Shown: positions 30,301-64,000, counted from the first letter of the stretch. The stretch is 64,000 nucleotides of DNA from Rhodosorus marinus CCMP1338 (GCA_029953675.1 JAMWBK010000006.1:1240001-1304000), one strand, 5' to 3'. Notes: generated by a model not told the origin, from the sequence alone. Program-made: numbers and translations.

Positions 30301-30764
30301 GACCCTTTTGATGCGACGGCGTACGGGAATACGCAAATATCCGTGTTGCAGCATCCATCCCCAGTCCCCGCGGGCGCTTCGAACTTTTGTAAGCACATGT
30401 ATAGTTTTTTCTTCGTGAGAGGTCCGGTGCGGGAAACAAAGAAAGGGTCGTCAGTCTCTATCCCACATGACGCAGCCCCTCCTGCTCTCAGATCATTCCA
30501 AACCCATCCCTCATCTGCGAGGTAATTGAACCGTATGCAAATCTTCTCTCCGATATACTTCACATTCAAGTAAACTATCCCAACCCTTTCACCCGTTCCA
30601 TCGGCATGCAGAACATAATTTCGAGCATTATAATCCTTATAGATGTAATGATTCTCAAACTGTTCCGCGTAATCTGAACAGAGCTGCTGACATGTCCCAA
30701 ATCCTACCAGCAGACCCAACAGAATCAACCATTTGTACAAACCGAGAGCTTTTCTAGCCTCCAT
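27309..30764 (-). CDS. Secreted protein: signal peptide, two Cys-rich domains and a very long Pro-Thr/Ser repeat tail (extensin/mucin-like)
   Basis: Single [28 protein letters not shown] is a signal-like N-terminus. Two about 150-aa domains with VG.V..C.RF..GW/EW..DPF..Y.CL..F..CCN..ICV.P..C..C..C. About 600 aa of (PT)n follow; no TM or GPI signal seen. Confidence 0.85.
27315..29150. repeat. Coding (GGCGTT)n hexamer array with higher-order variants
   Basis: Tandem GGCGTT/TGCGTT blocks plus recurring ggttccggctcggcgttggcgtcagcg units encoding PT, QT and [13 protein letters not shown]. Confidence 0.95.
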
Positions 30765-35419: not shown

Positions 35420-35720
35420 AACGAATGAATTGGTTGAATCGGAGACTGAAGAAAAAACCCCTAGGGGAAGAAAAGACTAAGCGCGGCGAAGATCGCGCGC
35501 CTCCAACATCAAAGCAGCGTTCATACGCCACAGCAAGGAACTTAAACGGGTAAACAACGAGGACAGACGGTCAGGGCGTTGGCGGAACACTTCCCGGAGC
35601 CGACGAGAACCGACGGAACCCAAAGCACTCAATGACCAAGGCATGGAGTTCAGAGGAAGATTCTCTGCAGAGAAGTGCGCCATAAACGGCACGACTGGAC
35701 CTGCTGGGCTCATCTCTAAA
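35420..35720 (-). mobile_element. 3' fragment of a CRE-like RLE retroelement, subfamily B
   Basis: Encodes LVIECFG and, in a shifted frame, SVGSRRLREVF..PDRLSSLFTRLS.LLWRMNAALMLEAR, homologous to the subfamily A RLE C-terminus; T-rich 3' tail ending aattcatt. Confidence 0.75.
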
Positions 35721-36524: not shown

Positions 36525-36659
36525 CTCTGGCGCTCCAACGCTGCTTCGATGATCCGTTTATTCAGAGGCTAACTAACGCTGCTTCACTGTTGGACGCGCA
36601 CCATCAGCGTCTTGATTCTCGCTTCTCAGGGTAGTTAGGCTCTGAATAAACGGATCATC
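36525..36659 (+). mobile_element. Truncated subfamily A 3' end carrying an antisense 27-nt tail insertion
   Basis: ctctggcgctcc..cgcttctcagggtagttaggctctgaataaacggatcatc. Insert at 36548-36574 is flanked by AACGCTGCTTC at 36537-36547 and 36575-36585. Confidence 0.85.
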
Positions 36660-37408: not shown

Positions 37409-37648
37409 TCGCCTGGTACCTCTGGCCATTGAGTGCTTTGGGTTTCTGGATTCCGTTGGTTCTCGTTGGCTTCGGGAAGAGTTCCATGAACGCCGTGACC
37501 GTCTGTCCTCGTTGTTTACCCGTTTAAGTTTCTTGCTGTGGCGTATGAACGCTGCTTTGATGTTGGAGGCGCGCGATCTTCGCCACGCTTAGTCTTCTTT
37601 TTCCGCCTCGGGGTTCTTTCTTCAGTCTCCGATTCAACCAAGTCATTC
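37409..37648 (+). mobile_element. Short subfamily B element, about 240 bp, with possible TSD AGTCTTA
   Basis: Starts tcgcctggtacc; encodes LAIECFGFLDSVGSRWLR..RDRLSSLFTRLSFLLWRMNAALMLEAR; AGTCTTA at 37402-37408 and 37649-37655. Confidence 0.8.
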
Positions 37649-39009: not shown

Positions 39010-39268
39010 ATGAATTTGTTTAACCGGAGACTGAAAGAATAAACCCCGAAGGGGAAAAAACAGACCATGCAGCAGGCGAAGGTGGCGCCTCCTCCTCCAA
39101 CATCAAACCAGCGTTCATACGCCACAGCAAGAAATTTAATCCGGTAAACAACGAGGAGAGAAGGTCAAGGCGTTCGGCGGAACAACTCCCGAAGCCAACG
39201 AGAACAAGCGGAATCCATAAACCCAAAGCACTCAATGGCCAGAGGGTACCAGGCGATGAGCTAGAGTC
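39010..39268 (-). mobile_element. Short subfamily B element
   Basis: Reverse complement reads tcgcctggtaccctctggccattgagtgctttggg..gtggcgtatgaacgctggtttgatgttggagg..aaattcatt. Confidence 0.78.
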
Positions 39269-45184: not shown

Positions 45185-45430
45185 TTGCCTGGTACCTCCA
45201 TTGGGTACTTTGGGTTTGTGGTTCCGTTGGTTGTCGTTGGCTTCGGGATTTGTTCCGCGAACGCCCTGACCGTCTGTCCTCGCGATGTTTACCCGTTTAA
45301 GTTTCTTGCTGTTGCGTATGAACGCTGCTATGAGGTTGGAGGCGCGGGGGATCTGCGCGGTGCATAGTTCTTTTTTTTTCCCTGGTTTTTTTTTCTTTCA
45401 GGCTCTCAAGCCAGGCTAATTCATTCAATT
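45185..45430 (+). mobile_element. Short subfamily B element
   Basis: tgcctggtacctccattgggtactttggg..gcgtatgaacgctgct..gttggaggcgcg..aattcattc. Confidence 0.75.
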
Positions 45431-45611
45431 CAAGTAGACTCAAAATACACACGTGTTAGAGACTACCTTACAAGTCTACGGCGAAAAGGCTGAAATCATC
45501 TAGATGGCTGACATAGGGAAAAATGGGCTAAAGCTAAAGAAAAACCGTTTACCGGGCGTCAACCCAGCAATAAAGAAAGTGTTGGCCGGGAAGGCCATTC
45601 GGGATCATCCC

Positions 45612-45785
45612 TGGGGGTGGTACTGCGGTAGTACTACTACTAGGGTTGTTCCAAGTGGGTTGGGTTTTTCGTTGTTTACCCGTCTACTCCCCCTGTTTTC
45701 GCGGGTTTAACCACCTCTGGATCGTAAACAGTGGAAAACCCGACCCAATTGGCACAACCCTACTACTAGCGCAGTACCCCGCGAG
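45612..45785. repeat. Imperfect inverted repeat (about 55-bp arms), MITE- or hairpin-like
   Basis: gggggtggtactgcggtagt..agggttgttccaagtgggttgggtttttc pairs with gaaaacccgacccaattggcacaaccct..cgcagtacccc. Confidence 0.7.
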
Positions 45786-45912: not shown

Positions 45913-46138
45913 ATACTTACCTGGCCGGCTGATCGCTCCTCACGTAAGGGCATCTGCTTGGATGAGTGTGAGCATAGCACGTCACATTGTCTTTTCGGAC
46001 AACTGTGGCAGTCTCGCTTGACTCCTACGAAGTCACCTCTGTGTGACTGTCGACCGCTTAATTTCTGAGCATGGGGAGATTGATGATCCGTTTATTCAGA
46101 GGCTAACTGAGGAGATTCGCGTTCGCGCGACCTCCCCT
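45913..46138 (+). ncRNA. U1: U1 spliceosomal snRNA with an insertion in stem-loop IV (possibly pseudogenised)
   Basis: 5' ATACTTACCTGG; SL1 loop CTCACGTAA (U1-70K-like); SL2 loop with ATAGCAC (U1A-like); GTCGACCGCTTAATTTCTG (Sm site); SL4 GGGGAGATT..CGCG-TTCG-CGCG-ACCTCCCC, interrupted at 46082-46117. Confidence 0.88.
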
Positions 46139-48159
46139 AACTCCCCTGAACGGATCATCAATGAATTGTAGGTATTCAGGCACGTTAGGGATCAATAAAG
46201 AAAGGGCACCGGTTCTGGGGGAAAGTTGGGTGGAGTCCAATTTTGTGAACAAGAGAAGTGTAACTTAAGGCTTAATTTACACTTCCCTTCTTGTATTGCT
46301 GGGTTGACGCCCCATAGACGACAATCGGTAGTTCTAACAGGATTCTTCCAACATTTACACGTGTTCGCGCGGTGGCAACGGAAATTGCAGCGAGAGTGGC
46401 CCAAGCGGTACGCCTGGTTGCGGATCTCGTTGTGTCCGACCTAAATGCGCGTCGCAGTGAGTACATTCACCTCTCCATCCCTTGTCCTCAGGCGACCAGG
46501 TACCTGCCTGCGTCCGCTCGGCGTCGAGGAGCTGCAGCTCGGTGTATGCGGCATGTGAAAGAATCGCAGTTCGCGGCAGCGATGTCAAACCCTACTTTTC
46601 GCGATTCGGTGGTGACATATCCGTTTGTCCCCCTCATTATTGAATGCTTTGGCTTGATAGATAGTGTAGGTTCTCGCTGGCTGCGCGGTATCTTTCGCAA
46701 CGACCTAGGGCGTCTAGATAGTCTGCTCACGGAGCTTTCTTTGACCCTGTGGCGCTTAAATACTGCTTTATTTGTAGACGTCATCATCGTCTTATCTCTC
46801 GCTTCTCAGGGTAGTTAGGCTCTCAATGAACGTGATGTCCACGCTCAGCGCTACCTACGGGCTACCGTGCAACCGGCGAGTGGACTTTGGAAACCAGTCC
46901 GAGCCTGCTTATCATCCGGAACGTACGGGCTACAAAATCGAAGACTGGGGGAAACGGGGTCTCTAAGCATGATTTTTTCTTTTTTTGGGAAGCTTTGGGC
47001 CTGCGCGAGCAGATGCTTCTATACGTCGACTTGTGGGGTTGCGCATTCGTCCTATGTCACCCTGAAGATTTCCCGGGGTATGTTCGAAAGCGGGTTTTCC
47101 CGTGCCCTGGACCATCGCAATGTCCAACAACGGATAGGCCTTCATACAGGCGGTACACCGCGGCCAGAAGATTTCATTGTAGCACGGAAGATGAAGTCTC
47201 GCACACCAGGGGAAATCCATACGTCCGTTCCTTCAGAGCCTAACTACCCTGAGAAGCGAGAGACAAGACGATGATGACGCGCGTCTACAATCAAAGCAGC
47301 ATTTGAGCGCCACAGGGTCAAAGAAAGCTCCGTGAGCAGACCACCTAGACGGCCTGGGTCGTTGCGAAAGATACCTCGCAGCCAGCGAGAACCTACACTA
47401 TCTATCATGCCAAAGCATTCAATAATGAGGGGGACAAACGGATATGTCACCGCCGAATCGCGAATGGTAGGGTTTGACATCGCTGCCGCATACTGCGATT
47501 CTTTCACATGCCGCATAGACCGAGCTGCAGCTCCTCGACGCCGAGCGGACGCAGGCAGGTACCTGGTCGCCTGAGGACAAAATAATGGAGAGGTGAATGT
47601 ACTCACTGCGACGCGGTTTTGAGCGCAACATGCTCCTTTGTTGTTTAAAGCTTGGCTTTCATTACAGGGTATCGTGCTCGTCCACTTCGCCTTGCTCCTC
47701 TGTCGCAGCCCCGTCCTGCTGTTCCGTTGAAGATGCGCCCTCGTCCACGTTTTCAATGTCGTCAATTCCCTCCATCATTTTCGGGATCTCGTCAGGTCCT
47801 ATAACCGTAGGGATCCAATGCTCAAAGTTTAACAGAAAATCTCCGTAAATCATCTCTTTGAGAGGCTGAAAACGCAGAATGTTTCGGTAACGGTGGAGTG
47901 CTCCTCGTCGCCCGGACCTCCGAGAATAACCCTCATGAGGGACACGGGTTAGTTTGGCGATTCTGAGGCGAATGGCTGCTCGACCTATGAAACTTCTCTG
48001 GGTTTTCGTCGGATACGGAGTAAGTGTAAAAAGTTAGCATCGGGTTCCATTGCTGCGGGCCGGGGAGTGTGATTCCGCTCGCAACGCAGATCTTTGTTAG
48101 AGGAAGGGGCATGTCGGTTGTTATGTGTACCGGATCCACTGATGCCGTGGAACGCGTTG

Positions 48160-48416
48160 AGAATACAGACGTTGTACTCCAAATGTCCCGCCAGAGCCAT
48201 GATGAAGGAGGTCTTTCCATAACCAGGTGGCCCATGGAGCAAGTACCCACGCCGGAATGGAATACCCCTATCGACATAGCATTTTGCGCTTGATGAAAAC
48301 TCCGTGACGTCGTCGACGAGCTTCTGGGCAGTGGTTCCAGCCAACATTACAGAATTCAGAGGCCGCCTCCTCCGCGGATTCCCAAATACTTTCCACTCCG
48401 TCATCAGGGCGGTGTT
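48160..48416 (-). pseudogene. BCS1: Truncated BCS1-like mitochondrial AAA ATPase fragment
   Basis: [63 protein letters not shown]. No N-terminus, and Walker B and the second region of homology are not seen. Fused upstream to a CRE fragment. Confidence 0.85.
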
Positions 48417-49584
48417 CCCCTAGGCTAGAGAGGTCTGCGCCCACCAGTGTGCTCAAACGTCCCTCGCACGCTGATCGATGATCCGTTTATTCAGAGGCTA
48501 AGTACCCTGAGAAGCGAGAGACAAGACGCTGATGACGCGCGTACACAAACAGAGCAGAATTGGAGCGCCACAGGGTTAAAGAAAGCTCCGTGAGCAGACT
48601 ATCTACACGCCCTGGGTCGTTGCGAAACAGAGCTCGCAGCCAGCGAGAACCTTCACTGTCTATCAAGCCAAAGCCCTCAATGATGAGGGGAACGAACCGG
48701 TATGTCACCGCCGAATCGCAAAAGGTAGGGTTTGACATCGCTGCCGCGTACTGCGAAACTTTCACTTCCGCGTGGACCGAGCTGCAGCTCCTCGACGCCG
48801 AGCCACACGCTGATCAGCGCGAAGGGCTTCTAGCTTCACTTCCGCATGGACCGAGCTGCAGCTCCTCGACGCCGAGCCACACGCTGATCAGCGCGAAGGG
48901 CTAGCCAAGCCCCCCGCGTCGAAGGGAGCTGCCGCAGAAAATAGTTCAGGCGTTGACACGCACTGAACCTGAAGGCTCTGATAAACTGATGAACTCGCAG
49001 TGCCCACAGGGACACCGAATAGAATGAAGCCCTCGGGACGCCAAATGTCCGGGAACAGAGAGGGAACGGTACAAAATCTAGGACGCCACCTCGCCCAGAA
49101 GGGAGTACGCCTGCATCAGGAGTCCCGAGAAGGGTCACATCGTCATGGAAGGCGACGACGCGGACCCGCGGGAACTGATGCTGCACGCGCAACAGCGCCA
49201 ACTGCAATCCACATGCGTGCAGAAGAGCGCATGTGGATTGCAGTTGGCCCTTAGGGCCTTAGGGCAAAAAGGAAGACCCCTGCTGAACACCCGTCTGTGA
49301 CACAAAGCTCTGGCTGTTTACACCCAAGGTGACAAGGCGAGGGCAAGTTGGCCCCTCCCCGTAGACCCGGCGCACGAAACGGAAACCCGATGGGAAGAGC
49401 TGACGAACAACCTCGAGCGCGTGAACACGCGACACGCTGTTAAAGGCGTTCCCAAAATCAACCGAAAGTGTCCGAAAGGCTCCTCCCCGAGGCTGTCCAA
49501 CTGCATGATGCGAGTCACCAGTTCACAGCCGCCCGAATAGCCCACACGCACCTGGGTCAGGCCGAAAAATCCCCGCGCCTCATT

Positions 49585-51530
49585 GATGATCCGTTTATTC
49601 AGAGGCCAACTACGATCCGATTGTTCAGACGCTAACTACCCTGAAAAGCGAGAGACAAGACGCTGATGACGCGCATCCACAAACAAAGCAGAATTTCAGC
49701 GCCACAGGGTCAAAGAAAGCTCCGTGACCAGACTATCTAAACGCCCTGGGTCGTTGCGAAACAGAGCTCGCAGCCAGCGAGAACCTACACGATAGATATA
49801 TCAAGCCAAAGCGCTCAATAATGAGGGGGACGAACCGGTATGTCACCGTCGAATCGCGAAAGGTAGGGTTTGACATCGCTGCCGCGTACTGCGAATCTTT
49901 CACTTGCCGCATGGACCGAGCTGCAGCTCCTCGACGCCGAGCCGACGCAGGCAGGTACCTGGTCACCTGAGGACAAGGGATGGAGAGGTCAATGTACGCA
50001 CTACAACGCGCATCGAGGTCAGTCACAACGAGATCCGCCACCCGCTGTACCGCTGGGGCGTCACTCTCATCAGCGATTTCCGATGCCACCGCGAGAGCGA
50101 CCTCATACTCCACTTCTCGGTCCGTACCGAGCGATTGAGAACGAAGGTAGCGGAAAAGCAAGCGGTTGAGCCGCGTATGGCGTCTGGTCCGGGCCCCTTG
50201 AACCTCCGCACAAGACGCCAACACATGGGCACCATAATCACCCCACGGCACATTGGCCCCGCACAATGCGCGTCTAGAAAATCCCGCTCAACAGGCCAAG
50301 GGGGTTGCGGCAAACCCAGGTAAAGTCGTAAGCTTACACAAAGTTCGATATCGTTAATTGCCAACCGCGGATACGCAGGTATGACCGGGAAGAAACGGGA
50401 GCTGAGACTCCCCCCCAAACCGCGCAGGCGAGCCAAAGTCGACGCCGAGCACGAAGGTAAACTCAGAAGGGTGGCATACGAGTCCCGATGTATGTCCCAC
50501 GAAAGGGTTTTGTGGATTACATCGGTCCTCGAAGGGGCCGGACCGGACTGGGAAACGCCCTGCTCAGGCGGTCTCGACGGCACAGCCACGGCGTCAATAT
50601 CCTCGGCAGTTTCTACACCATTTCCAACAGACGGTGCTGCAGCAGAGACTCCCGAACGCTGGCCACCGAGGGAGTCAAGAACTGCCGCCCAGGAATCGCA
50701 CCGAGCCTGGGTACCACTCGGCAGGGCGTTACATTGTTGAAAAGCGGCCTCCAGTTCCGAAAAACCCCCCCCGAGCCGTGGGGCGAGAGTCCCGTCCAGC
50801 CGCCCAACCCGAAGTCCACTCAACAAACCACTCACATGCGGATCACACTCCGCAGACCATGTACTAAGCGCAGTGGCCCACGAACTCACCACAGCCGCCG
50901 GCTGGATCGACGCATAAGATCCCACAGCCAGCCCGCCCAACCGCACGGGCAACGCGATCTGCCGGTGAAGGACGTCCTTTTCTGCATCCCCCAAAACAGA
51001 TAGCTCAGCATCCATCAGCGTGCCGAGCACGTCCCTCGCTCGTCGGTCTGCGCGGAGCGCCAGCCAAGACCCCCACTCGGAGGGTAGCTGCCGCAAAAAG
51101 TACGTCAGCCTCTGGCACGCGCTGAACCGGAAGATGAGCAGAGCGGTCTGGAGGTACCCTTCTGGGAGAGTGCACGGCTCAGACAGGAGCTCAGCATGAT
51201 GACTCAGGAGCGCGGAGAGGCTGCGTTCAACAAATATCGGAGTGCCTAGGGGACACCGAACAGAAGGAAGCCCTCAGCTCGCCAAATATCTCGGAACCTG
51301 GATGGAACCGCGTCCGCGGTGCAGCGAGACCCCCCGCAGAAGTCGCACTTGGCATGGTTGATACGCAGCCCCCACCAAGGAAGCCACCTCGCCGAGAAAA
51401 TCGTAGGCCGGCACCAGATCGTCGGGAGTGCCAAGAAGCGTCACATCGTCATGGAAGGCGACCTCACGGACTCGCGGGACCTGATGTTTCAGCCGCAACA
51501 GCAGCAATCCACAGGCGTGCAGGAACAGCT
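49585..51530 (-). mobile_element. 5'-truncated CRE-like copy (RT C-terminus to 3' tail)
   Basis: ORFs 50023-51096 and 49733-50266; two stacked tails at about 49585-49640. Confidence 0.9.
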
Positions 51531-51544
51531 CTATGCATCCCTCC

Positions 51545-54500
51545 CGTAGACGCTTCCTCCGTCGTGAGCGAGCAGGATGTCTGAGTCTTTTAGGGAACAT
51601 TGCGAGCTTCCTGCTTTCTTTCCGAGCCCAGGGAGGACTGGCGCTCCCGCCTTTTCTCTTGCTTGGTTCGAAGGTTTTGTTGGGCGCTTTCCTCCTGGGG
51701 ATATCCCTCTTTGCCCTCGTTTGCCCCCAGTCTCTCTCCCTCATCGTTTGCGCAGGAGGGTTTCTTTTCTTTTGGATTTCCTGCTTATGGAGGTGGCCGA
51801 CCACCCTCAAGCAGCACTTGCTTGGAAGCTTTTGCTTGTTTTTCCTCGGCTAGTGCTCACGGTCTCCCAGGGGCACGATGCATGTCCAATTAGACGCAAA
51901 GTTCAGTCTTTTCTGGCGGGGGACTTTGCTTTCTTAGAATCTTTATACCTCGCTAGTGCCTCTTCTTCCTCTTCGTGGGGGACTTCACCTTTTTCTCGTT
52001 CCCGTAGGCAGGTACGGGCAAAGGTAGCAGTGGCACAGGGGGATATTCGGCGTGGGGCGGCCATCCTCCAGCAAGGCGCTTCAGTCGAGCCGTATCGCAC
52101 CGACCTGGCTGATCCAGTCACCGCGTTGTTCCCTGCGTGCGACGTGAGTTGGAACTCTGAGTTCCAGCGTGTCTTAGATGAATGCTTCGTAAAAATAGTA
52201 TGCTCAAAGTTGTTCAGCAATAACAAATTGTGTGGATAAGGGGGGGGTGAGTTTGGAGTGCTTCAGGTCGAACTCAAAACCTGACATCTCCTCTTCTGGG
52301 ATTCGTCATGGTAAGGCGTCATCCACAAAAATTTTCTTTCAGGCGATGAACTCCGGGAGCATATGCCCGTTGCGCTGGTCTTTTTGTCGATTCCTCACGC
52401 GGTAGGGGTCGGTTGCTTGTCCGGCCGGATGAGGTTCTGGCTCTGCTTAGGTCCGCCCCGAAAGGTCGTGCACTTGGTCCCTCAGGACTCCGGGTCGAAC
52501 TTTTTCACTGGTTGGGTGAAGAACGGCTGGACGCCCTTGCGCGGGTACTGGAGGGTCTTGTCAATGGGGACGATTTTTTCGTAGAGGCCTGGGCACTATT
52601 CTCGCGCTTCCAGCTGGTGGTCCTCTTGCCCAAGCCTGGACATTCAGACCAGACACCTTCGCTTCGGCCAATCGGGATGTGCGAAGCATTGCGGAAGCTG
52701 GCGAGCCGCTTTCTATCGCGTCAGCTCATTAGGGAGGCCAGGGGTTTTTCTTAGGTTGACCCATGTCGGTGTCGGCTATTCAGGTGGCTGTGAACTGGTG
52801 ACGCGTATACCTGCAGCTGGACGGTCTCCGCGATGAGCCCTTGGGCACGCTTTCTGTGGATTTCGCCAACGCGTTTAACAGTGTGTCTCGAGCACGCGCT
52901 TGAGGAAGTTCGTCAGCTTTTCCCCTCTGGCTTCCCGTTCTTACGCCGCGTATATGGTGAAGCGCCGAACGGGCCCCGATTTGTCACCTTGGGTGCCGAG
53001 AGCCACACCTTTGCGGCTCATACGGGTGTGCAGCAGGGCGATCCCTTAGGGCCGTTCCTGCACGCCCGTGGATTGCAACTGGTGCTGTTGCGGCTGAAAC
53101 ATCATCAGTTCCCGCGGGTCCGTGCGGTCGCCTTCCATGACGATGTGACGCTTCTTAGCACTCCCGACGATCTGGTGGGGGTCTACGATTTTCTCGGCGA
53201 GGTGGCTTCCTTGGTGGGGCTGCGTATCAACCACGCCAAGTGCGACTTCTGGGGGGGGGTCTCACTGCACCTTGGACGCGGTTCCATCCAGGTTCCGAGA
53301 TATTTGGCGAGCTGAGGGCTTCCTTCTGTTCGGTGTCCCCGTAGGCACTCCGATATTTGTTGAACGCAGCCTCTCCGCGCTCCTGAGTCATCATGATAAG
53401 CTCCTGACTGAGCTGTGCAGTCTTCCAGAAGGGTACCTCCAGATCGCTCTGCTCATCTTCCGGTTCAGCGCGTGCCATAGGCTGACCTACTTTTTGCGGC
53501 AGCTACCCTCCGAGTGCGGGTCTTGGCTGGCGCTCCGCGCAGACCGACGAGCGAGGGACGTGCTAGGCACGCTGGTGGATGCTGAGCTATCTGTTTTGGG
53601 GGATGCAGAAAAGGACGTCCTTCACCGGCAGATCGCGTTGCCCGTGCGGCTGGGCGGGCTGGGTGTGGGATCTTACGCGGGGATCTAGCCTGCGGCTGTG
53701 GTGAGTTCGTCGGCCAATGCGCTTAATACACGGTCTACGGAGTGTGATCCGCATGTGAGTGGTTTGTTGAGTGGATTTCGGGTTGGGCGCCTGGACGGGA
53801 CTCTCGCTCCACGGCTCGGGAGGGTTTTTGCGGAACTGGTGACCGTTTTTCAACAATGTAACGCCCTGCCGAGTGGTACCCAGGCTCATTGCGATTCCTG
53901 AGCGGCAGTTATTGACTCCCTCGGTGGCCAGCGCTCGGGAGTCTCTGCTACAGCACCGTGTGTTGGAAATGGTGTAGAAACTGCCGAGGATATTGACGCC
54001 GTGGCTGTGTCGTCGAGACCGCCAGAGCAGGGCGTTTCCCGGTCGGGTCCGGCCCCTTCGAGGACCGATGTAATCCAAAAAACCCTTTCGTGGGACATAC
54101 ATCGGGACTCGTATGCCACCCTTTTGAGTTTACCTTCGTGCTCGGCGTCGACTTTGGCTCGCCTGCGCGGTTTGGGGGTTAGTCACAGCTCCCGTTTCTT
54201 CACGGTCATACCTGCGTATCCGCGGTTGGCGCTTACCGATCTCGAACTTCGTGTAAGCTTACGACTTTACCTGGGCTTGCCGCAACCCCCCTGGCCTGTT
54301 GAGCGGGATTCTAGATGCGTATTGTGCGGGGCCAATGTACCGTGGGGTGATTATGGTGCGCATCTGTTGGCGTCTTGTGCGGAGGTTCAAGGGGCCCGGA
54401 CCAGACTCCATACGCGGCTCAACCGCTTGCTGTTCCGCTACGTTCGTTCTCAATCGCTCGATACGGACCGAGAAGAGGAGTATGAGGTCGCTTTGGCGGT

Positions 54501-54972
54501 GGCATCGGAGGTGGCTGATGAGAGTGACGCCCAGCGGTACAGCGGGTGGCGGATCTCGTTGTGACTGACCTCAATGCGCGTCGCAGTGAGTACATTGACC
54601 TCTCCATCCCTTGTCCTCAGGTGACCAGGTACCTGCCTGCGTCGGCTCGGCGTCGAGGAGCTGCAGCCCGGTCCATGCGGCAAGTGAAAAATTCGCAGTA
54701 CGCGGCAGCGATGTCAAACCCTACCTTTCGCGATTCGGCGGTGACATACCGGTTCGTCCCACTCATTATTGAGTGCGTTGGCTTGATAGATAGTGTAGGT
54801 TCTCGCTGGCTGCGAGCTCTGTTTCGCAACGACCCAGGGCGTTTAGATAGTCTGGTCACGGAGCTTTCTTTGACACTGTGGCGCTCCAATTCTGATTTGT
54901 TTTTTGAAGCGCGTCATCAGTGTCTTGTCTCTCGCTTCTCAGGGTAGTTAGCCTCTGAATAAACGGATCATC
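51545..54972 (+). mobile_element. Long CRE-like copy (pre-RT region to tail), frameshifted, with a foreign insert at about 52180-52379
   Basis: Colinear pre-RT, RT and RLE fragments ending VSRFSG*, followed by the 27-nt tail at 54946-54972. Confidence 0.9.
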
Positions 54973-54974
54973 AA

Positions 54975-55835
54975 CAGCCCTAAGGGATCGCCCTGCTGCA
55001 CACCCGTATGAGCCGCAAAGGTGTGGCTCTCGGCACCCAAGGTGACAAATCGGGGCCCGTTCGGCGCTTCACCATACGCGGCGTAAGAACGGGAAGCCAG
55101 AGGGGAAAAGCTGACGAGCTACCTCAAGCGCGTGTGCTCGAGGCACACTGTTAAACGCGTTGGCGAAATCCACAGAAAGCGTGCCCAAGGGCTCATCGCG
55201 GAGACCGTCCAGCTGCAGGTATACGCGTCACCAGTTCACAGCCACCTGAATAGCCGACACCGACATGGGTCAACCTAAGAAAAACCCCTGGCCTCCCTAA
55301 TGAGCTGACGCGATAGAAAGCGGCTCGCCAGCTTCCGCAATGCTTCGCACATCCCGATTGGCCGAAGCGAAGGTGTCTGGTCTGAATGTCCAGGCTTGGG
55401 CAAGAGGACCACCAGCTGGAAGCGCGAGAATAGTGCCCAGGCCTCTACGAAAAAATCGTCCCCATTGACAAGACCCTCCAGTACCCGCGCAAGGGCGTCC
55501 AGCCGTTCTTCACCCAACCAGTGAAAAAGTTCGACCCGGAGTCCTGAGGGACCAAGTGCACGACCTTTCGGGGCGGACCTAAGCAGAGCCAGAACCTCAT
55601 CCGGCCGGACAAGCAACCGACCCCTACCGCGTGAGGAATCGACAAAAGGATCTAAGACATGCTGGAACTCAGAGTTCCAACTCACGTCGCGCGCAGGGAA
55701 CAACGCGGTGACTGGATCAGCCAGGTCAGTGCGATACGGCTCGACTGAAGCGCCTTGCTGGAGGATGGCCGCCCAAGCCGAATATCCCCCTGTGCCACTG
55801 CTGCCTTTGCCCGTACCTGCCTACGGGAACGAGAA
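54975..55835 (-). mobile_element. Inverted duplicate of the 5' RT part of the 51545-54972 copy
   Basis: Shares the ttttcttaggttgacccatg and gtatacctgcagc variants with that copy but lacks the 52180-52379 insert. Confidence 0.85.
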
Positions 55836-58800
55836 GAGGGTAGTTAGCCTCTGAATAAACGGATCATCAAAAACGGGAAGAAGGTGAAGTCCCGCACGAA
55901 GAGGAAGTCATGGCCCGGACCAGACGCCAGACGCGGCTCAACCGCTTGCTGTTCCGCTACCTTCATTCTCAATCGCTCGGTACGGACCGAGAAGTGGAGT
56001 ATGAGGTCGCCCTGGCGGTGGCATCGGAGGTGGCTGATGAGAGTGACGCCCAGCGGTACAGCGGGTGGCGGATCTCGTTGTGACTGACCTCAATGCGCGT
56101 CGCAGTGAGTACATTGACCTCTCCATCCCTTGTCCTCAGGCGACCAGGTACCTGCCTGCGTCGGCTCGGCGTCGAGGAGCTGCAGCTCGGTCCATGCGGC
56201 AAGTGAAAGATTCGCAGTACGCGGCAGCGATGTCAAACCCTACCTTTCGCGATTCGGCAGTGACATACCGGTTCGTCCCCCTCATTATTGAGTGCTTTGG
56301 CTTGATAGACAGTGTAGGCTCTCGCTGGCTGCGAGCTCTGTTTCGCAACGACCCAGGGCGTTTAGATAGTCTGGTCACGGAGCTTTCTTTGACCCTGTGG
56401 CGCTCCAATTCTGCTTTGTTCGTGGACGCGCGTCATCAGCGTCTTGTCTCTCGCTTCTCAGGGTAGTTAGCCTCTGATCAAACGGTATGACCGTGAAAAA
56501 AAAAAAAAGAGGAAGAAGAGACACTAGCGAGGTATAAAGATTCTAAGAAAGCAAAGTCCCCCGCCAGAAAAGACTGAACTTTGCGTCTAATTGGACATGC
56601 CTCGCGCCCCTGGGAGACCGTGAGCACTAGCCGAGGAAAAACAAACAAAAGCTTCCAAGCAAGTGCTGCTTGAGGATGGTCGCCCACCAACCTCCATAAG
56701 CAGGAAATCCAAAAGATGCGCACCATAATCACCCCACGGCACATTTGGCCCGCACAACGCGCATCTGAATCCCGCTCAACAGGCCAAGGGGGTTGTGGCA
56801 AGCCCAGGTAAAGTCGTAAGCTTACACGAAGTTCGAGATCGGTAAGCGCCAACCGCGGATACGCAGGTATGACTGTGAAGAAACGGGAGCTGAGACTCCT
56901 CTCATTAGTGAGCTTGCGAGACAGAAAACGGCTCGCCAACCTGCGCAGGGTCTCGCACATCCCGATGGGCCGTAGGGATGGCGTCTGGCACGAATGCCCA
57001 GGCTTAGGCAGTAGCACCAGGTGCGACCGCGACAGTAGGGCCCATGCATCGTCGCAAAAATCGTCCCCATTTACAAGACCCTCCACCACTCGCGCAAGGG
57101 CGTCGAGGCCCTCCTCGCCCAACCAGTGCAAAAGCTCAACCCGGAGACGTGAGGGACCCGGCATGACCCTTCGGGGCGGACCCAAGAAGAGCCAAAACCT
57201 CTTCAGGCCGAACCAGCAACCTGCCCGTGTCAGTCGTGGAGGCGACATAAGGATCTAAGACGCGATTCGGCCTTGTCCTATCGGTTTGTTCCTCTCATCA
57301 TCGAGTGCTTTGGTTTAGTTGATTGTGTCGGCTCTCGCTGGCTTCGTGGGCTCTTTCGTCACAGCCCAAGTCGTCTTGCTAGCCTCCTCACGATGAACGG
57401 ATCATCATCGAGCTGTCCTTGACCTTATGGCGTTCCAACGCGGCTTTATTGTTCGACGCGCGTCATCAGCGTCTTGTTTCTTGCTTCTCAGGTAGTTAGG
57501 CTCTGATAAACTGATGATGATGAGGATCTAAGACACGCTGGAACGTAGGGTTCCAACTCGCGTCGTGCGCAGGAAACAACGCGGCAACTGTGTCAGCCAA
57601 GTCAGCTCAATAACGCTCGGCTGAAACGCGTTGCTGGAGAATGGCCGCCCCCCGCCGAATATCCCCCTGTGCCACTGCTGCTTTTGCCCTAGCCTGTCGA
57701 CGAGAACGAGAAGGAGGCGAAGTCGAACACAAAGAGAAAGTAGACACACTAGCAAGGTAGAAAGATTCCAGGAAAGCAAAGTCCCCTGCGAGAAAAGACT
57801 GGACTTTACGTCTAATGGGACAGGCATGGCGCCCCTGGGAGACAGTGAGCACTAGCCGAGGAAAAAGAAACAGGAGTTGCCAGGCAAGTGCATCCTGAGG
57901 GTGGTCGGCCACCTCCATCAGTAAAAAGTCCAAGAGAAATGACACCCGCCGGCGCAGCCGATGAGGAAGGCAAGCCGGAGGAGATTGAGAGCAAAGGGGG
58001 ATTTCCCCAGAGGGAAAACCAGCAACAAACCCCGAGAACCAAGAGAAAAGGCGAGAACGCCAGGCCTCGGAGCTACCGGAGCTGGGAAAAAAATCAGGGA
58101 GCTCGCAGTGATCCCGGAAGGACTCAGGCATCCTGCTCTTTCACCTCTGAGGAAGCGTCGACTGGATGTGAATCCGTAGGGGGAGCTGGGGAAGGCGCCC
58201 CTGCCACATGCGTCAAATGAGGACGCTTGGGCGGAGGACCACGCAAAGAAGTCAAGGAGGCGTAAACGTCCGCCAGAACCGCGGAAACCCGACCCCGAAC
58301 GCCAAATGGCGAGGGGGTACTAGGCTCGAGGGCGAGCGGATCCACCTCCGAATCCCCGCGAGCAAAATCCATGGCAGAAGGCTCAACCACAGCCAGAGGC
58401 TCTACGCACGCAGAGAGACGCCTCACTGGGAACACCTCAGCAAAATCAGGATGGGTCTCCAAAAGCGGAGTTTCAGAGACAAGGAAATCGTGGACAGCGG
58501 AGTGGAGAATGCCCCGAGTTGGAAGCCGGTCGCGCCGCTACCCGCCCGGTGCGGCCTTCGTCCTCCCAAGTGCTCCTTCGTGGGTCCGTTGAGGCCCGCG
58601 CGGGGGCCCTGGTAAGTACATTCCCTGCTGAGCCTGCCGTTGACTCTGTTCAACGGACCATATCTCCTCTCCGCTGGGTCTTGATGGCCAACGTGCGGCC
58701 CCAGCGCTCCTCGCGCTCCGGGGCCCGCATTCCTGTTCGCGATTTTCGTGACACGATGGCCTCGTGTCTCGGCGCGTCGCCCCGCGATTTTCTCTACGTT

Positions 58801-59299
58801 GATTTTTCGGGAAACCATGCTTCTTGGTGACAGATCCGTTTATTCAGAGGCTAACTACTCTGAGAAGCGAGAGACAAGACGCTGATGACGCGCGGTCCAC
58901 AAACAAAGCAGAATTGGAGCGCCACAGGGTCAAAGAAAGCTCCGTGAGCAGACTATCTAAACGCCCTGGGTCGTTGCGAAACAGAGCTCGCAGCCAGCGA
59001 GAACCTGCACTATCTATCAAGCCAAAGCACTCAATAATGAGAGGGACGAACCGGTATGTCACCGCCGAATCGCGAAAGGTAAGGTTTGACATCGCTGCCG
59101 CGTACTGCGAATCTTTTGGTCGCCTGAGGACAAGGGATGGAGAGGTCAATGTACTCACTGCGACGCGCATTGAGGTCAGTCACAACGAGATCCGCCACCC
59201 GCTGTACCGCTGGGGCGTCACTCTCATCAGCAATTTCCGATGCCACTGCCAGATACTGCGCACCAAATCCTATCTACTTTGTTGAAAACGTCTAATGCG

Positions 59300-61490
59300 C
59301 AGAGACCTGTTTTAGCGAATAAGGTTTTGACACGCGCGCTGGTGTTTCTTTAATGCTTGATTTTGATCGTTTGTCTGCGGAATCCCTCGCCCCTTCGGAT
59401 CTCCTTGGCGCTCGCGCAGAGGACATTCTGAGCTTGGCGGTTTCGGCCCATTTTGAACGGCTTTCAAGGGTTCAGAAAAACCTGCTAGATCGGCTCCCAA
59501 ATAGGGGTTTCCTCCTTGCTGCGGTCCAAGATTTCCTTGCCTCGGAAACTTCGCTTTTGGAGAATCATCCTGACTTTGCTCAGGTGTTTCCCGCTGGGCG
59601 TCTTTCTGTGGGTGCGGAGCCTTGTGACGACGTGGGGCAACTACCCTCTATGGATGTAAATGTCGATCCAGAGGTGTACCCGTTCGCCATTGAGCCGAGC
59701 ACCCCTTCGCCCTTTTGCGTTCGGGGGAGGGTCTCCGGCTCCTTAGGGGCTATCTATGCATCCCTCTCCTCTTTGCGTGCCCCTCCGCTCAAGCGCCCCT
59801 TCTTGGCGCCAGTTGCGGGAGGAAATTCTTCTGATTCCGTTGCGGAAATGAGAGCAAAGAATAGAAACCCCCTGGGTCACCCCAAAGCTTCAACCGGGGA
59901 ATATTAGAACCTTATCAATCTGCCTTTAGCTCCTGTAGACACTTCCTCCGTGGTGAGGGAGCATGATGTCTGAGTGTTTTAGGGAACATTGCGAGCTTCC
60001 TGCTTTCTTTCCGAGCCCAGGTAGCTTTGAGGACTGGCGTTCTCGCCTTTTCTCTTGGTTCGAAGGTTTTGTTGGGCGTTTTCCTTCTGGGGATATCCCT
60101 CTTTACCCTCGTTCGCCCCCAGTCTCTCTCCCTCATCGTTTGCGCAGGAGGGTTTCTTTCTTTTGGATTTCCTGCTTATGGAGGTGGCCGACCATCCTCA
60201 AGCAGCACTTGCTTGGAAGCTTCTGTTTGTTTTTCCTCGGCTAGTGCTCACGGTCTCCCAGGGGCGCGATGCATGTCCAATTAGACGCAAAGTTCAGTCT
60301 TTTCTGGCGGGGGACTTTGCTTTCTTAGAATCTTTACACCTCGCTAGTGTCTCTTCTTCCTCTTCGTGGGGGAGTTCACCTTCTTCTCGTTCCCGTAGGC
60401 AGGTACCGGCAAAGGCAGCAGTGGCACAGGGGGATATTCGGCGTGGGGCGGCCATCCTCCAGCAAGGCGCTTCAGTCGAGCCGTATCGGACTGACTTGGC
60501 TGATCCAGTCGCCGCGTTGTTCCCTGCGCGCGACGTGAGTTGGAACTCTGAGTTCCAGCGTGTCTTAGATCTTTTTGTCGATTCCTCACGCGGTAGGGGT
60601 CCAAAAAACCCTTTCGTGGGACATACATCGGGACTCGTATGCCACCCTTCTGAGTTTACCTTCGTGCTCGGCGTCGACTTTGGCTCGCCTGCGCGGGGAG
60701 TCTCAGCTCCCGTTTCTTCATGGTCATAATTGCGTATCCGCGGTTGGCGCTTACCGATCTCGAACTTCGCGTAAGCTTACGACTTTACCTGGGCTTGCCG
60801 CAACCCCCTTGGCCTGTTGAGCGGGATTCTAGACGCGCATTGTGCGGGGCCAATGTACCGTGGGGTGATTATGGTGCGCATCTGTTGGCGTCTTGTGCGG
60901 AGGTTCAAGGGGCCCGGACCAGACGCCATACGCGGCTCAACCGCTTGCTTTTCCGCTACCTTCGTTCTCAATCGCTCGGTACGGACCGAGAAGTGGAGTA
61001 CGAGGTCCCTCTGGCGGTGGCATCGGAAATTGCTGATGAGGTGACGCCCCAGCGGTACAGCGGGTGGCGGATCTCGTTGTGACTGACCTCAATGCGCATC
61101 GCAGTGAGTACATTGACCTCTCCATCCCTTGTCCTCAGGCGACCAGGTACCTGCCTGCGTCGGCTCGGCGTCGAGAAGCTGCAGCCCGGTCCATGCGGCA
61201 AGTGAAAAATTCGCAGTACGCGGCAGCGATGTCAAACCCTACCTTTCGCGATTCGGCGGTGACATACCGGTTCGTCCCACTCATTATTGAATGCTTTGGC
61301 TTGATAGATAGTGTAGGTTCTCGCTGGCTGCGAGCTCTGTTTCGCAACGACCCAGGGCGTTTAGATAGTCTGGTCACGGAGCTTTCTTTGACACTGTGGC
61401 GCTCCAATTCTGCTTTGTTTGTGGACGCGCGTCATCAGCGTCTTGTCTCTCGCTTCTCAGGGTAGTTAGCCTCTGAATAAACGGATCATC
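59300..61490 (+). mobile_element. CRE-like copy with its N-terminal region, internally deleted (RT missing), ending in the 27-nt tail
   Basis: N-terminal ORF pieces 59353-59907 and 60055-60600 are fused directly to post-RT sequence at about 60600; tail at 61464-61490. Confidence 0.85.
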
Positions 61491-64000
61491 ATGTAGGGGT
61501 CGCTTGCTTGTCCGGCCGGATGAGGTTCTGGCTCTGCTCCGGTCCGCCCCGAAAGGTCGTCCACCTGGTCCCTCAGGACTCCGGGTCGAACTTTTTCACT
61601 GGTTGGGTGAAGAACGGCTGGACGCCCTTGCGCGGGTACTGGAGGGTCTTGTCAATGGGGACGATTTTGCGCAGAGGCCTGGGCACTATTGTCGCGCTCC
61701 CAACTGGTCCTCTTGCCCAAGCCTGGACGTTCAGACCAGACACCTTCGCTTCGGCCAATCGGGATGTGCGAAGCATTGCGGAAGCTGGCGAGCCGCTTTC
61801 TATCGCGTCAGCTCACTAGGGAGGCCAGGGGGTTTTTTGGGTTGACCCAGGTCGGTGTCGGCTATTCAGGTGGCTGTGAACTGGTGACGCGTATCCTGCA
61901 GTTGGACGGTCTCCGCGATGAGCCCTTGGGCACGCTTTCTGTGAATTTCGCCAACGCGTTTAACAGTGTGTCTCGAGCACACGCGCTTGAGGTAGTTCGT
62001 CAGCTTTTCCCCTCTGGCTTCCCGTTCTTACGCCGCGTATATGGTGAAGCGCCGAACGGGCCCCGATTTGTCACACCTTGGGTGCCGAGAGCCACACCTT
62101 TGCGGCTCATACGGGTGTGCAGCAGGGCGATCCCTTAGGGCAGTTCCTGCACGCCTGTGGATTGCAACTGGTGCTGTTGCGGCTGAAACATCAGTTCCCG
62201 CGGGTCCGTGCGGTCGCCTTCCATGACGATGTGACGCTTCTTAGCACTCCCGACGATCTGGTGCCGGCCTACGATTTTCTCGGCGAGGTGGCTTCCTTGG
62301 TGGGGCTGCGTATCAACCATGCCAAGTGCGATTTCTGGGGGGGGGTCTCACTGCACCGCGGACACGGTTCCATCCGGGTTCCGAGATATTTGGCGAGCTG
62401 AGGGCTTCCTTCTGTTCGGTGTCCCCGTAGGCACCCCGATACTTGTTGAACGCAGCCTCTCCGCGCTCCTGAGTCATCACGATGAGCTCCTGCTCATCGT
62501 GATGACTCAGCTCCTGACTGAGCTGTGCACTCTCCCAGAAGGTACCCTTACCTCCAGAGCGCTCTGCTCATCTTCCGGTTCAGCGCATGCCAGAGGCTGA
62601 CCTATTTTTTGCGGCAGCTACCCTCCGAGTGGGGGTCTTGGCTGGCGCTCCGCGCAGACCGACGAGCGAGGGACGTGCTAGGCACGCTCATGGATGCTGA
62701 GCTATCTGTTTTGGGGGATGCAGAAAAGGACGTCCTTCACCGGCAGATCGCGTTGCCCGTGCGGTTGGGCGGGCTGGCTGTGGGATCTTATGCGTCGATC
62801 CAGCCGGCGGCTGTGGTGAGTTCGTGGGCCACTGCGCTTAGTACATGGTCTGCGGAGTGTGATCCGCATGTACTCACATGCGGATCGAACCACTCGGTTT
62901 GTTGAGTGGACTTCGGGTTGGGCGGCTGGACGGGACTCTCGCCCCACGGCTCGGGGGGGGTTTTTCGGAACTGGAGGCCGCTTTTCAACAATGTAACGCC
63001 CTGCCGAGTGGTACCCAGGCTCGGTGCGATTCCTGGGCGGCAGTTCTTGACTCCCTCGGTGGCCAGCGTTCGGGAGTCTCTGCTGCAGCACCGTCTGTTG
63101 GAAATGGTGTAGAAACTGCCGAGGATATTGACGCCGTGGCTGTGCCGTCGAGACCGCCTGAGCAGGGCGTTTCCCAGTCCGGTCCGGCCCCTTCGAGGAC
63201 CGATGTAATCCACAAAACCCTTTCGTGGGACATACATCGGGACTCGTATGCCACCCTTCTGAGTTTACCTTCGTGCTCGGCGTCGACTTTGGCTCGCCTG
63301 CGCGGTTTGGGGGGGAGTCTCAGCTCCCGTTTCTTCCCGGTCATACCTGCGTATCCGCGGTTGGCAATTAACGATATCGAACTTTGTGTAAGCTTACGAC
63401 TTTACCTGGGTTTGCCGCAACCCCCTTGGCCTGTTGAGCGGGATTTTCTAGACGCGCATTGTGCGGGGCCAATGTGCCGTGGGGTGATTATGGTGCCCAT
63501 GTGTTGGCGTCTTGTGCGGAGGTTCAAGGGGCCCGGACCAGACGCCATACGCGGCTCAACCGCTTGCTTTTCCGCTACCTTCGTTCTCAATCGCTCGGTA
63601 CGGACCGAGAAGTGGAGTATGAGGTCGCTCTCGCGGTGGCATCGGAAATGGCTGATGGGATTGACGCCCCAGCGGTACAGCGGGTGGCGGATCTCGTTGT
63701 GACTGACCTCAATGCGCGTCGCAGTGAGTACATTGACCTCTCCATCCCTTGTCCTCAAGCGACCAGGTACCTGCCTGCGTCGGCTCGGCGTCGAGGAGCT
63801 GCAGCTCGGTCCATGCGGCAAGTGAAAGATTCGCAGTACGCGGCAGCGATGTCAAACCCTACCTTTCGCGATTCGGCAGTGACATACCGGTTCGTCCCCC
63901 CTCATTATTGAGTGCTTTGGCTTGATAGATAGTGTAGGTTCTCGCTGGCTGCGTGCGAGCTCTGTTTCGCAACGACCCAGGGCGTTTAGATAGTCTGGTC
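61491..64000 (+). mobile_element. CRE-like copy, RT to RLE, frameshifted, running off the window end
   Basis: Colinear RT and RLE motifs across ORFs 61504-63911. Confidence 0.9.

What the first reader, a model, noticed from the sequence alone, without database searches (positions are those of the whole stretch)
45913..46160. U1 snRNA gene hit by the retroelement tail in stem-loop IV, with a second scar at its 3' end
Seen: SL4 reads GGGGAGATT-[27-nt tail, antisense]-GAGGAGATT-CGCGTTCGCGCGACCTCCCC, a 9-bp TSD with one mismatch. Immediately after the 3' end come CTCCCCT-AA-CTCCCCT and a sense-strand tail remnant, TGAACGGATCATC (46147-46159). The 18-kb retroelement pile begins about 200 bp later. 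Established: RLE elements are often site-specific for multicopy small-RNA genes (CRE/SLACS and NeSL for spliced-leader genes, Utopia for U2). Inference: this family may prefer U1 SL4, which would be an unusual target for a CRE-clade element, and the locus may have seeded the cluster.
Basis: partly seen in the sequence, partly recalled or inferred. Interest (0 to 1): 0.8.

Follow-up and report, generated by a model that had tools for sequence, protein, structure and literature searches.

The report
Retroelement tail stub inside U1 gene
A U1 spliceosomal RNA gene copy in an unidentified microbial eukaryote carries a 27-base stub of a neighbouring jumping gene in its last hairpin, but nothing in this window shows that the jumping gene aims at U1.

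Summary
Window 45913-46137(+) is the only Rfam match in 64 kb. It matches U1 at 45.8 bits (E 2.7e-8), below the 69.5-bit gathering score. Stem-loop IV is split by 27 nt (46082-46108, antisense) that are 27/27 identical to the 3' terminus of a repeat family. The insert is flanked by an 8/9 direct repeat, GGGGAGATT / GAGGAGATT. A 13-nt sense tail remnant (46147-46159) and a tandem 9-nt duplication follow the U1 3' end.

The family is a non-LTR retrotransposon with a reverse transcriptase and an R2-like CCHC plus restriction-like endonuclease C-terminus. Its 28-nt tail is the stop codon plus a 25-nt 3' UTR.

The inference of a U1 stem-loop IV preference is not supported here:
- Ten clean 3' junctions in the window have ten different flanks, sharing only a purine then A/T after the tail.
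- Three targets defined by their duplications (9, 10 and 14 bp) share no motif.
- No other U1 fragment flanks any copy.
- Five loci of relatives have no snRNA gene nearby.

CRE-clade membership was not tested. The genome could not be reached, so the genome-wide test remains undone. The most likely reading is an ordinary, extremely 5'-truncated insertion by a low-specificity family next to its own pile. Whether this U1 is a working gene or a retrocopy is open.

The parts
45913..46137 (+). U1 snRNA-like gene copy. It is 225 nt as it stands and 189 nt without the insert and one duplication copy.
   Evidence: RF00003 scores 45.8 bits (E 2.7e-8), the only Rfam hit in the window. The 5' AUACUUACCUG is intact. 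Loop I and loop II motifs are near consensus, and there is a 30-nt extra hairpin in the stem-loop II region (alignment).
46060..46069 (+). Sm-site-like AATTTCTGAG
   Evidence: Aligned to the model's AAUUUgUGg.
46073..46081 (+). Upstream copy of the target-site duplication, GGGGAGATT. This is the original 5' strand of stem-loop IV.
   Evidence: It pairs perfectly with CUCCCC at 46132-46137, and the restored hairpin folds at -17.5 kcal/mol.
46082..46108 (-). 27-nt tail-only insert of the RLE retroelement. It covers the last 2 nt of the stop codon plus the 25-nt 3' UTR.
   Evidence: 27/27 identical to the tails at 54946-54972, 55842-55868, 61464-61490 and 36548-36574.
46109..46117 (+). Downstream copy of the target-site duplication, GAGGAGATT, with one mismatch
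   Evidence: Together with 46118-46137 it forms a weaker but complete stem-loop IV (-11.9 kcal/mol). This matches the Rfam partial hit to model positions 140-164.
46118..46137 (+). Stem-loop IV inner stem, UUCG loop and 3' strand (CGCGTTCGCGCGACCTCCCC)
46130..46147 (+). Tandem 9-nt duplication ACCTCCCCT / AACTCCCCT at the U1 3' end. Its origin is unexplained.
   Evidence: Read directly from the sequence. The two copies sit side by side and do not flank the remnant, so this is not a normal target-site duplication.
46147..46159 (+). 13-nt sense-strand tail remnant TGAACGGATCATC, of an older subfamily type
   Evidence: ACGGATCATC is matched exactly. The remnant is 13/13 identical to the diverged tail at 57394-57406. 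With its flanks it forms a perfect 14-nt inverted repeat with the stem-loop IV insert (I5).
46365..64000 (.). Pile of nested and rearranged copies of the same RLE non-LTR family, in both orientations
   Evidence: BLAST map and inverted repeats. RVT_1 lies at 52833-53315. CCHC and RLE motifs lie at about 63438-63908.
61463..61490 (+). Reference 28-nt tail TAGTTAGCCTCTGAATAAACGGATCATC. The first three bases, TAG, are the ORF stop codon.
   Evidence: The ORF segment ends ...LVSRFSG at 61462. The tail is matched.
36538..36585 (-). Comparator: a 28-nt tail-only insert (36548-36575) with a perfect 10-bp duplication ACGCTGCTTC. It sits 56 nt upstream of the 3' end of an older sense copy (ending at 36659).
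55828..55885 (+). Comparator: a 27-nt tail-only insert (55842-55868) followed by AAA, with a 14-bp duplication (12/14). It lies inside an antisense copy.

Best explanation
A U1 snRNA gene copy lies beside a retroelement-rich region. It was hit by an ordinary target-primed reverse transcription event of a low-specificity non-LTR retrotransposon that carries a restriction-like endonuclease.

Proposed sequence of events (inferred from the junctions):
- The U1 sense strand was nicked at GGGGAGATT^CGCG.
- Reverse transcription of the element RNA stopped after 27 nt, at the stop codon.
- The other strand was cut 9 bp away, giving the 9-bp duplication.

Because the duplicated 9 bp is the 5' strand of stem-loop IV, a slightly weakened stem-loop IV is rebuilt downstream of the insert. 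In effect the insert sits between the Sm site and stem-loop IV.

The 13-nt sense remnant just past the U1 3' end is the trace of an earlier event by an older subfamily. The hits reflect intense local activity of the family, and possibly attraction to its own earlier remnant. They do not reflect recognition of U1. Shown: the sequence anatomy, the duplications, the family type and the lack of a common target. Inferred: the order of events and the mechanism.
For: - The insert is 27/27 identical to the family tail, and the duplication is 8/9.
- The U1 call splits into two collinear Rfam hits around the insert.
- Three other tail-only inserts of 27-28 nt occur in the window. Those at 36548 and 55842 have clear duplications of 10 and 14 bp in unrelated sequence. 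The one at 49585 directly abuts an older tail and has no recognisable duplication.
- Ten clean 3' junctions have ten different flanks. They share only a purine at +1 (10/10, P about 1e-3) and A/T at +2 (10/10, P about 8e-4).
- The three targets defined by their duplications share no significant similarity.
- No other U1 fragment exists in the window.
- The family has an RT and an R2-like CCHC plus RLE C-terminus.
- The antisense insert matches the young consensus exactly, while the sense remnant matches an older subfamily. This fits two successive events.
Against: - Two events of one family within 80 bp of a 190-nt gene is unlikely for random insertion. Roughly 190 bp in 64 kb is 0.3% per event.
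- Outside the pile the four tails form two inverted pairs, at 36.6 kb and at U1. This points to some non-random targeting that the simple model does not explain.
- Only one U1 locus and about 16 element ends could be examined.
- Most junctions lie inside the pile, where targets are other copies. A moderate preference for U1 cannot be excluded.
- The tandem ACCTCCCCT / AACTCCCCT duplication remains unexplained.
Confidence: 0.55

Rival explanations
1. The family has a real preference for U1 stem-loop IV, nicking at GGGGAGATT^CGCG, in the way Utopia uses U2 or CRE and NeSL use spliced-leader genes. On this reading the locus is one of many occupied U1 genes.
For: - Two traces of the family lie in or beside one U1 copy.
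- RLE lineages are often target-specific (PMC4640811).
- Utopia families vary in how strict their specificity is (abstract).
Against: - Nine of ten clean 3' junctions in the window are not in U1, and they share only R-W after the tail.
- The two other inserts with clear duplications lie in unrelated sequence with no shared motif.
- No U1 fragments flank other copies.
- Five loci of the nearest relatives found show no snRNA gene.
- The sense remnant lies outside stem-loop IV, at a different position and in the other orientation.
Confidence: 0.1
2. Homing to its own tail. New antisense tail-only inserts are directed to DNA 40-60 bp upstream of an existing tail of the same family, for example by the element protein binding tail DNA. 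On this reading U1 stem-loop IV was hit only because an older remnant already lay 38 nt downstream.
For: - The same architecture occurs twice outside the pile. At 36.6 kb an antisense 28-nt insert lies 56 nt upstream of the 3' end of an older sense copy. At U1 an antisense 27-nt insert lies 38 nt upstream of the older sense remnant.
- In both cases the sense tail is the older or more diverged one.
- My estimate of the chance that four random events in 46 kb form two such pairs is about 1e-5.
- Two further tails directly abut older tails, at 49585/49613 and 57406/57407.
Against: - There are only two cases.
- The U1 remnant is only 13 nt, which is little to bind.
- The 55842 tail-only insert is not near a tail.
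- The spacing differs between the two cases (38 versus 56 nt).
- No biochemical precedent was checked.
Confidence: 0.15
3. The U1 sequence is not a resident gene. It is a chimeric retrocopy or a SINE-like unit with a U1 head. Reverse transcription started on the element's 3' end, copied 13 nt, then switched template to U1 snRNA. This is the route known for snRNA-LINE chimeras and SINEU elements. The stem-loop IV insert came later.
For: - The U1 and the 13-nt remnant are on the same strand, only 9 nt apart, and the remnant ends at the element's exact 3' terminus.
- Tandem tail-to-tail and 113-nt-to-tail joints in the pile suggest that this RT often switches template after very short products.
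- There is precedent in snRNA plus L1 or Alu chimeras and in U1- or U2-headed SINEU elements (PMC4494074).
Against: - No duplication flanks the putative chimera. The best match is 6/8, and 8.3% of random position pairs do as well, whereas this family's real inserts show 8/9, 10/10 and 12/14.
- The extra AACTCCCCT between U1 and the remnant needs an ad hoc second jump.
- Only one copy is in the window.
- All U1 protein-binding motifs look intact, which fits a gene equally well.
Confidence: 0.2

Closest known systems
Extremely 5'-truncated non-LTR retrotransposon insertions made by target-primed reverse transcription
   Same: The insert keeps the exact 3' terminus of the element and is flanked by a 9-bp target-site duplication. 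Sister events in the window have 10- and 14-bp duplications.
   Different: The truncation point is unusually uniform. Four tail-only inserts are 27-28 nt, starting at the stop codon or one base inside it. The element has no poly(A) and ends in GGATCATC.
Utopia (U2 snRNA gene-targeting RLE non-LTR retrotransposons) and other target-specific RLE clades: CRE, NeSL, R2, R4
   Same: The element is an RT plus RLE non-LTR retrotransposon, and one insertion lies in a spliceosomal snRNA gene (PMC4640811).
   Different: Utopia copies share one and the same U2 flank, starting at U2 nucleotide 39. Here ten junctions have ten different flanks and only one is in U1. Clade placement was not tested.
HERO-type RLE elements, the RLE clade with many families that are not target-specific
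   Same: An RLE element with apparently low target specificity and variable duplication length (statement in PMC4640811).
   Different: No phylogeny was run, so this is a resemblance in behaviour only.
Dada-U1 DNA transposons of zebrafish
   Same: They are transposable elements found inside U1 snRNA genes (PMC3706591).
   Different: Dada elements are DDE DNA transposons with 6-bp duplications at one fixed U1 site, present in many U1 copies. Here the insert is a retroelement stub at a different site, in one copy.
snRNA-LINE template-switch chimeras and SINEU elements with U1 or U2 heads
   Same: A U1 sequence is followed on the same strand by the 3' end of a LINE-like element (PMC4494074).
   Different: No flanking duplication was found, the tail is only 13 nt, there is an extra 9-nt duplication, and only one copy was seen.
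R2 retrotransposon protein (solved structures 9nl3, 9dou, 8gh6)
   Same: A profile of the C-terminal CCHC plus PD-(D/E)XK-like region matches R2 residues about 984-1150 at E 2.4e-7. The RT matches at E 4.4e-10.
   Different: R2 is strictly specific for 28S rDNA. This family's RPD motif reads RVAD. No N-terminal zinc finger or Myb domain was detected by Pfam.

Membership tests
U1 spliceosomal RNA (Rfam RF00003) | Covariance-model score at or above the gathering score of 69.5 bits | tested here: not met
   The score is 45.8 bits as the sequence stands, with E 2.7e-8 in 64 kb. The split stem-loop IV scores 12.9 bits separately.
U1 spliceosomal RNA (Rfam RF00003) | 5' end AUACUUACCUG, which pairs with 5' splice sites | tested here: met
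   Exact match at 45913-45924, unique in the window.
U1 spliceosomal RNA (Rfam RF00003) | Loop I (U1-70K type) and loop II (U1A type) motifs, and an Sm site | tested here: met
   In the alignment, UCACGUAAGG aligns with the consensus AUCAaGAAGg, CAUAGCAC with CAUUGCAC, and AAUUUCUGA with AAUUUgUGg. A 30-nt lineage-specific hairpin is inserted in the stem-loop II region.
U1 spliceosomal RNA (Rfam RF00003) | 3' terminal stem-loop IV | tested here: met
   With the insert removed, GGGGAGAUUCGCGUUCGCGCGACCUCCCC folds at -17.5 kcal/mol, z -3.7. The partial CM hit covers model positions 140-164.
U1 spliceosomal RNA (Rfam RF00003) | Expressed, capped and Sm-bound RNA from a resident gene with an snRNA promoter | not testable with these tools
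   No transcript data are available, and there is no second snRNA gene in the window to define a promoter element.
RLE-encoding non-LTR retrotransposon | Reverse transcriptase domain | tested here: met
   RVT_1 scores 34.4 bits against a cut-off of 29.6. It also matches L1 ORF2 and R2 RT structures.
RLE-encoding non-LTR retrotransposon | C-terminal CCHC motif plus a PD-(D/E)XK restriction-like endonuclease | tested here: met
   The motifs C..C..H..C, RH(T/N), E, R(VA)D, D and K..Y align with relatives. The profile matches the R2 C-terminus at E 2.4e-7.
RLE-encoding non-LTR retrotransposon | 5'-truncated copies with a constant 3' end and target-site duplications, and no LTRs | tested here: met
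   Sixteen 3' ends were mapped, with truncations from 13 nt to more than 2.5 kb. Duplications are 9, 10 and 14 bp.
Target-specific RLE lineages (CRE/SLACS, NeSL, R2, R4, Utopia) | Copies share the same flanking target sequence in a multicopy gene or repeat | tested here: not met
   Ten clean 3' flanks are all different, and only R-W after the tail is shared. Three targets defined by their duplications are unrelated. This rests on the window only.
CRE clade | Placement in an RT phylogeny with CRE1, CRE2, SLACS and CZAR, and the CRE domain layout | not tested
   No reference sequences were at hand. Database relatives are unnamed, the best being 40% identical over 21% of the query.
snRNA-LINE template-switch chimera or SINEU-like element | snRNA followed on the same strand by the 3' end of the partner LINE | tested here: met
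   U1 lies on the + strand at 45913-46137 and the remnant on the + strand at 46147-46159, ending at the element's terminus.
snRNA-LINE template-switch chimera or SINEU-like element | A target-site duplication flanking the whole chimera | tested here: not met
   The best match is GAATACTA / GAATTGTA, 6/8 at a 3-nt offset. 413 of 5000 random position pairs do as well.

The most novel reading that the evidence does not exclude
The family's insertions are not random. One possibility is that it recognises DNA next to its own 3' tail, a self-homing that would explain the inverted tail pairs and the pile. Another is that it has a genuine secondary preference for U1 stem-loop IV. A further possibility is that the U1 plus 13-nt tail unit is the first U1-headed chimera or SINE made by an RLE-type reverse transcriptase in a protist.
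Probability: 0.15. Interest if true: 0.55.

Novelty: new member of a known kind. Interest (0 to 1): 0.25.

Why it matters
If the family really targeted U1, it would be the first retroelement lineage known to me to be specific for U1 genes. The literature I read names Utopia and Keno for U2 and Dada DNA transposons for U1. Such a lineage would add a case to the idea that early RLE elements survive by homing to multicopy RNA genes. The window does not support that.

What remains is a clean textbook example of an extremely truncated insertion. Its target-site duplication rebuilds the hairpin it interrupts. There is also a small curiosity: tail-only inserts of a constant 27-28 nt, equal to the stop codon plus the 3' UTR, which tend to lie near older tails.

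Tried and rejected
- **Scoring U1 without the insert.** I used the two collinear partial hits and folding instead.
- **Reaching the source genome.**
  - The tail 22-mer and the U1 27-mer are absent from viral contigs.
  - The tail 20-mer gave two hits in metagenome contigs (L001, L002). Their context is unrelated, so they are chance matches, as expected for a 20-mer in a collection that size.
  - An exact look-up of a window ORF found nothing.
  - The RT-RLE composite has no close relative. The best is 40% identical over 21% of the query.
- **Identifying the organism.** An ABC-G ORF is 77% identical to an unnamed MMETSP transcript, and the cluster look-up gave no species.
- **Twin priming as a single event producing both tails.** Rejected. 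The duplication flanks only the antisense insert, and the outer flanks do not match.
- **A structured 3' UTR as the cause of the constant 28-nt stop.** The last 150 nt fold no better than shuffles, z 0.06.
- **A shared motif among targets, such as CGCGCG near the nick.** Not significant.
- **The GGATCATC at 45602-45609 as a third tail.** It is only an 8-mer match, which is chance level.
- **snRNA genes next to relatives of the element.** None were found in five loci.

Full report
**1. What is there**

- A default Rfam scan of the window reports nothing.
- A scan at E-value threshold finds a single family in all 64 kb: U1 (RF00003) at 45913-46092(+). It scores 45.8 bits with E 2.7e-8, against a gathering score of 69.5.
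- A second, collinear partial hit at 46111-46135 covers model positions 140-164, which is stem-loop IV, at 12.9 bits.
- The alignment shows:
  - an exact 5' AUACUUACCUG;
  - near-consensus loop I (UCACGUAAGG) and loop II (CAUAGCAC);
  - an Sm-like AAUUUCUGA;
  - a 30-nt extra hairpin in the stem-loop II region.
- The 5' 12-mer occurs once in the window, and no other U1 fragment exists in it.
- ARAGORN finds no tRNA gene.

I accept the U1 call as homology. Three caveats apply: it fails Rfam's curated threshold, I could not score the excised sequence, and nothing here shows expression.

**2. The insert**

- 46082-46108 is 27/27 identical, in antisense, to the end of a 28-nt tail, TAGTTAGCCTCTGAATAAACGGATCATC. 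That tail occurs 8 times at <= 3 mismatches, with zero expected by chance.
- It is flanked by GGGGAGATT (46073-46081) and GAGGAGATT (46109-46117). An 8/9 repeat at zero offset occurs in about 1e-3 of random position pairs.
- With the insert and one duplication copy removed, stem-loop IV folds at -17.5 kcal/mol (z -3.7).
- The duplicated 9 nt is the 5' strand of the stem. So the downstream copy plus 46118-46137 is itself a complete, weaker stem-loop IV (-11.9 kcal/mol). The outer stem can also still close around the insert (-19.4 kcal/mol).
- In effect the insert lies between the Sm site and a rebuilt stem-loop IV.

**3. The second scar**

- TGAACGGATCATC at 46147-46159 lies on the + strand and ends at the element's exact terminus. 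It is 13/13 identical to the tail of an older, diverged copy at 57394-57406.
- With their flanks, the two tails form a perfect 14-nt inverted repeat, ATTGATGATCCGTT / AACGGATCATCAAT.
- Between the U1 end and the remnant lies a tandem 9-nt duplication, ACCTCCCCT / AACTCCCCT. The two copies sit side by side rather than around the remnant, so it is not a normal target-site duplication. I cannot explain it.

**4. The element**

- The pile from about 46365 to the window end is a mosaic of copies in both orientations.
- Conceptual translation gives a reverse transcriptase. RVT_1 scores 34.4 bits against a cut-off of 29.6.
- The C-terminus carries C..C..H..C, RH(T/N), E, R(VA)D, D and K..Y motifs that align with database relatives.
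- A profile of that region matches the CCHC plus restriction-like-endonuclease part of solved R2 proteins at E 2.4e-7.
- The ORF stop codon is the TAG that opens the 28-nt tail, so the 3' UTR is only 25 nt.
- Its clade was not tested. Its RT matches L1 ORF2 and R2 about equally.
- The best database relative is only 40% identical over 21% of the query.

**5. Does the family aim at U1?**

I mapped 16 3' ends.

- Ten end cleanly in GGATCATC, and their downstream flanks are all different. They share only a purine at +1 (10/10) and A/T at +2 (10/10). This means a nick after W-Y, mostly TT, on the primer strand. The chance of each is about 1e-3.
- Three tail-only inserts have clear duplications:
  - 9 bp in U1;
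  - 10 bp (ACGCTGCTTC) inside the 3' UTR of an older copy at 36.6 kb;
  - 14 bp inside an antisense copy at 55.8 kb.
- The three targets share no significant similarity.
- Five loci carrying the nearest relatives I could fetch have no snRNA gene within reach.

Known target-specific lineages are recognised because their copies share one flank. Utopia copies, for example, are followed by U2 starting at nucleotide 39 (PMC4640811). That defining feature is not met here. [quoted passage not shown]

**6. What is odd**

- Outside the pile there are only four tails, and they form two inverted pairs with the same layout. In each, an older sense tail has a young antisense 27-28-nt insert with its own duplication lying 38 nt (U1) or 56 nt (36.6 kb) upstream.
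- By my rough estimate, four random events in 46 kb would do this with probability near 1e-5.
- Four tail-only inserts have nearly the same length, 27-28 nt, starting at the stop codon or one base inside it. Ordinary 5' truncation should give scattered lengths.
- Two further tails directly abut older tails, at 49585/49613 and at 57406/57407.
- These points suggest either insertion near the family's own tails or frequent early template switching. With two cases outside the pile this is a lead, not a result.

**7. Gene or retrocopy?**

- The layout of U1, then a 13-nt tail on the same strand, recalls snRNA-LINE template-switch chimeras and U1- or U2-headed SINEU elements (PMC4494074).
- The expected duplication around the whole unit is absent. 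The best match is 6/8 at an offset, and 8.3% of random position pairs do as well. This family's real inserts show 8/9, 10/10 and 12/14.
- I therefore keep the retrocopy reading as a rival at about 0.2.

**8. Limits**

- The source genome is not in the collections searched.
- The organism is known only as a relative of an unnamed MMETSP marine eukaryote, through an ABC-G ORF that is 77% identical.

**9. Verdict**

The insertion, its duplication, the second remnant and the RLE type all hold.
- The proposed preference for U1 stem-loop IV fails the only test available.
- CRE membership and the idea that this locus seeded the cluster are untested.
- This is a new member of a known kind, and interest is low to moderate.

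Noticed in passing
window 36548-36575, 46082-46108, 49585-49612, 55842-55868: Four tail-only inserts of the RLE family have almost the same length, 27-28 nt. That equals the stop codon TAG plus the 25-nt 3' UTR. Reverse transcription seems to end repeatedly at the ORF boundary.
   Followed up: partly
window 36538-36659 and 46073-46159: Outside the pile the family's tails occur only as two inverted pairs. In each, a young antisense tail-only insert lies 38-56 nt upstream of an older sense tail.
   Followed up: partly
L003 3140-3200 and L004 7715-7770: A 40%-identical relative from a GC-rich metagenome contig also ends its ORF in ...RVSG*. It carries TAGTTAGC 22 nt after the stop, so the tail motif may be conserved across distant family members.
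   Followed up: no
window 45546-45579 and 46287-46320: A 34-nt inverted repeat is 82% complementary, with a 25-nt core at 96%. Its arms lie 707 nt apart and bracket the U1 and both tail fragments. No target-site duplication is evident, and its meaning is unknown.
   Followed up: partly
window 45619-45778: A long imperfect hairpin lies 135-294 nt upstream of the U1 start, with arms of about 60 nt and a 44-nt loop. It has no Rfam match.
   Followed up: no
window 45187-45405: A 200-nt dispersed repeat has copies at 37411-37602, 35442-35624 and 39094-39238, 83-85% identical. It is unrelated to the RLE family.
   Followed up: no
window 27317-29102: A 1.8-kb array of the hexamer TTGGCG has GC 0.63 and strong skew. 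It lies inside long ORFs on both strands, for example 27309-30827(-), 1172 aa. On the minus strand it would encode Ala-Asn repeats.
   Followed up: partly
window 20746-22894: Ty3/gypsy-type pol ORFs carry RVT_1, RNase H, an integrase zinc-binding domain and rve. This is an LTR retroelement unrelated to the finding.
   Followed up: no
window 13203-18487 (-): ABC-G type transporter ORFs carry ABC_tran and ABC2_membrane. The best relative is an MMETSP transcript at 77% identity, which is the only clue to the host lineage.
   Followed up: partly
window 45981-46010: The U1 carries a 30-nt extra hairpin (CACAUUGUC-UUUUCG-GACAACUGUG) relative to the Rfam model, after the U1A-type loop. No repeat matches it, so it is probably a lineage-specific expansion.
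   Followed up: no
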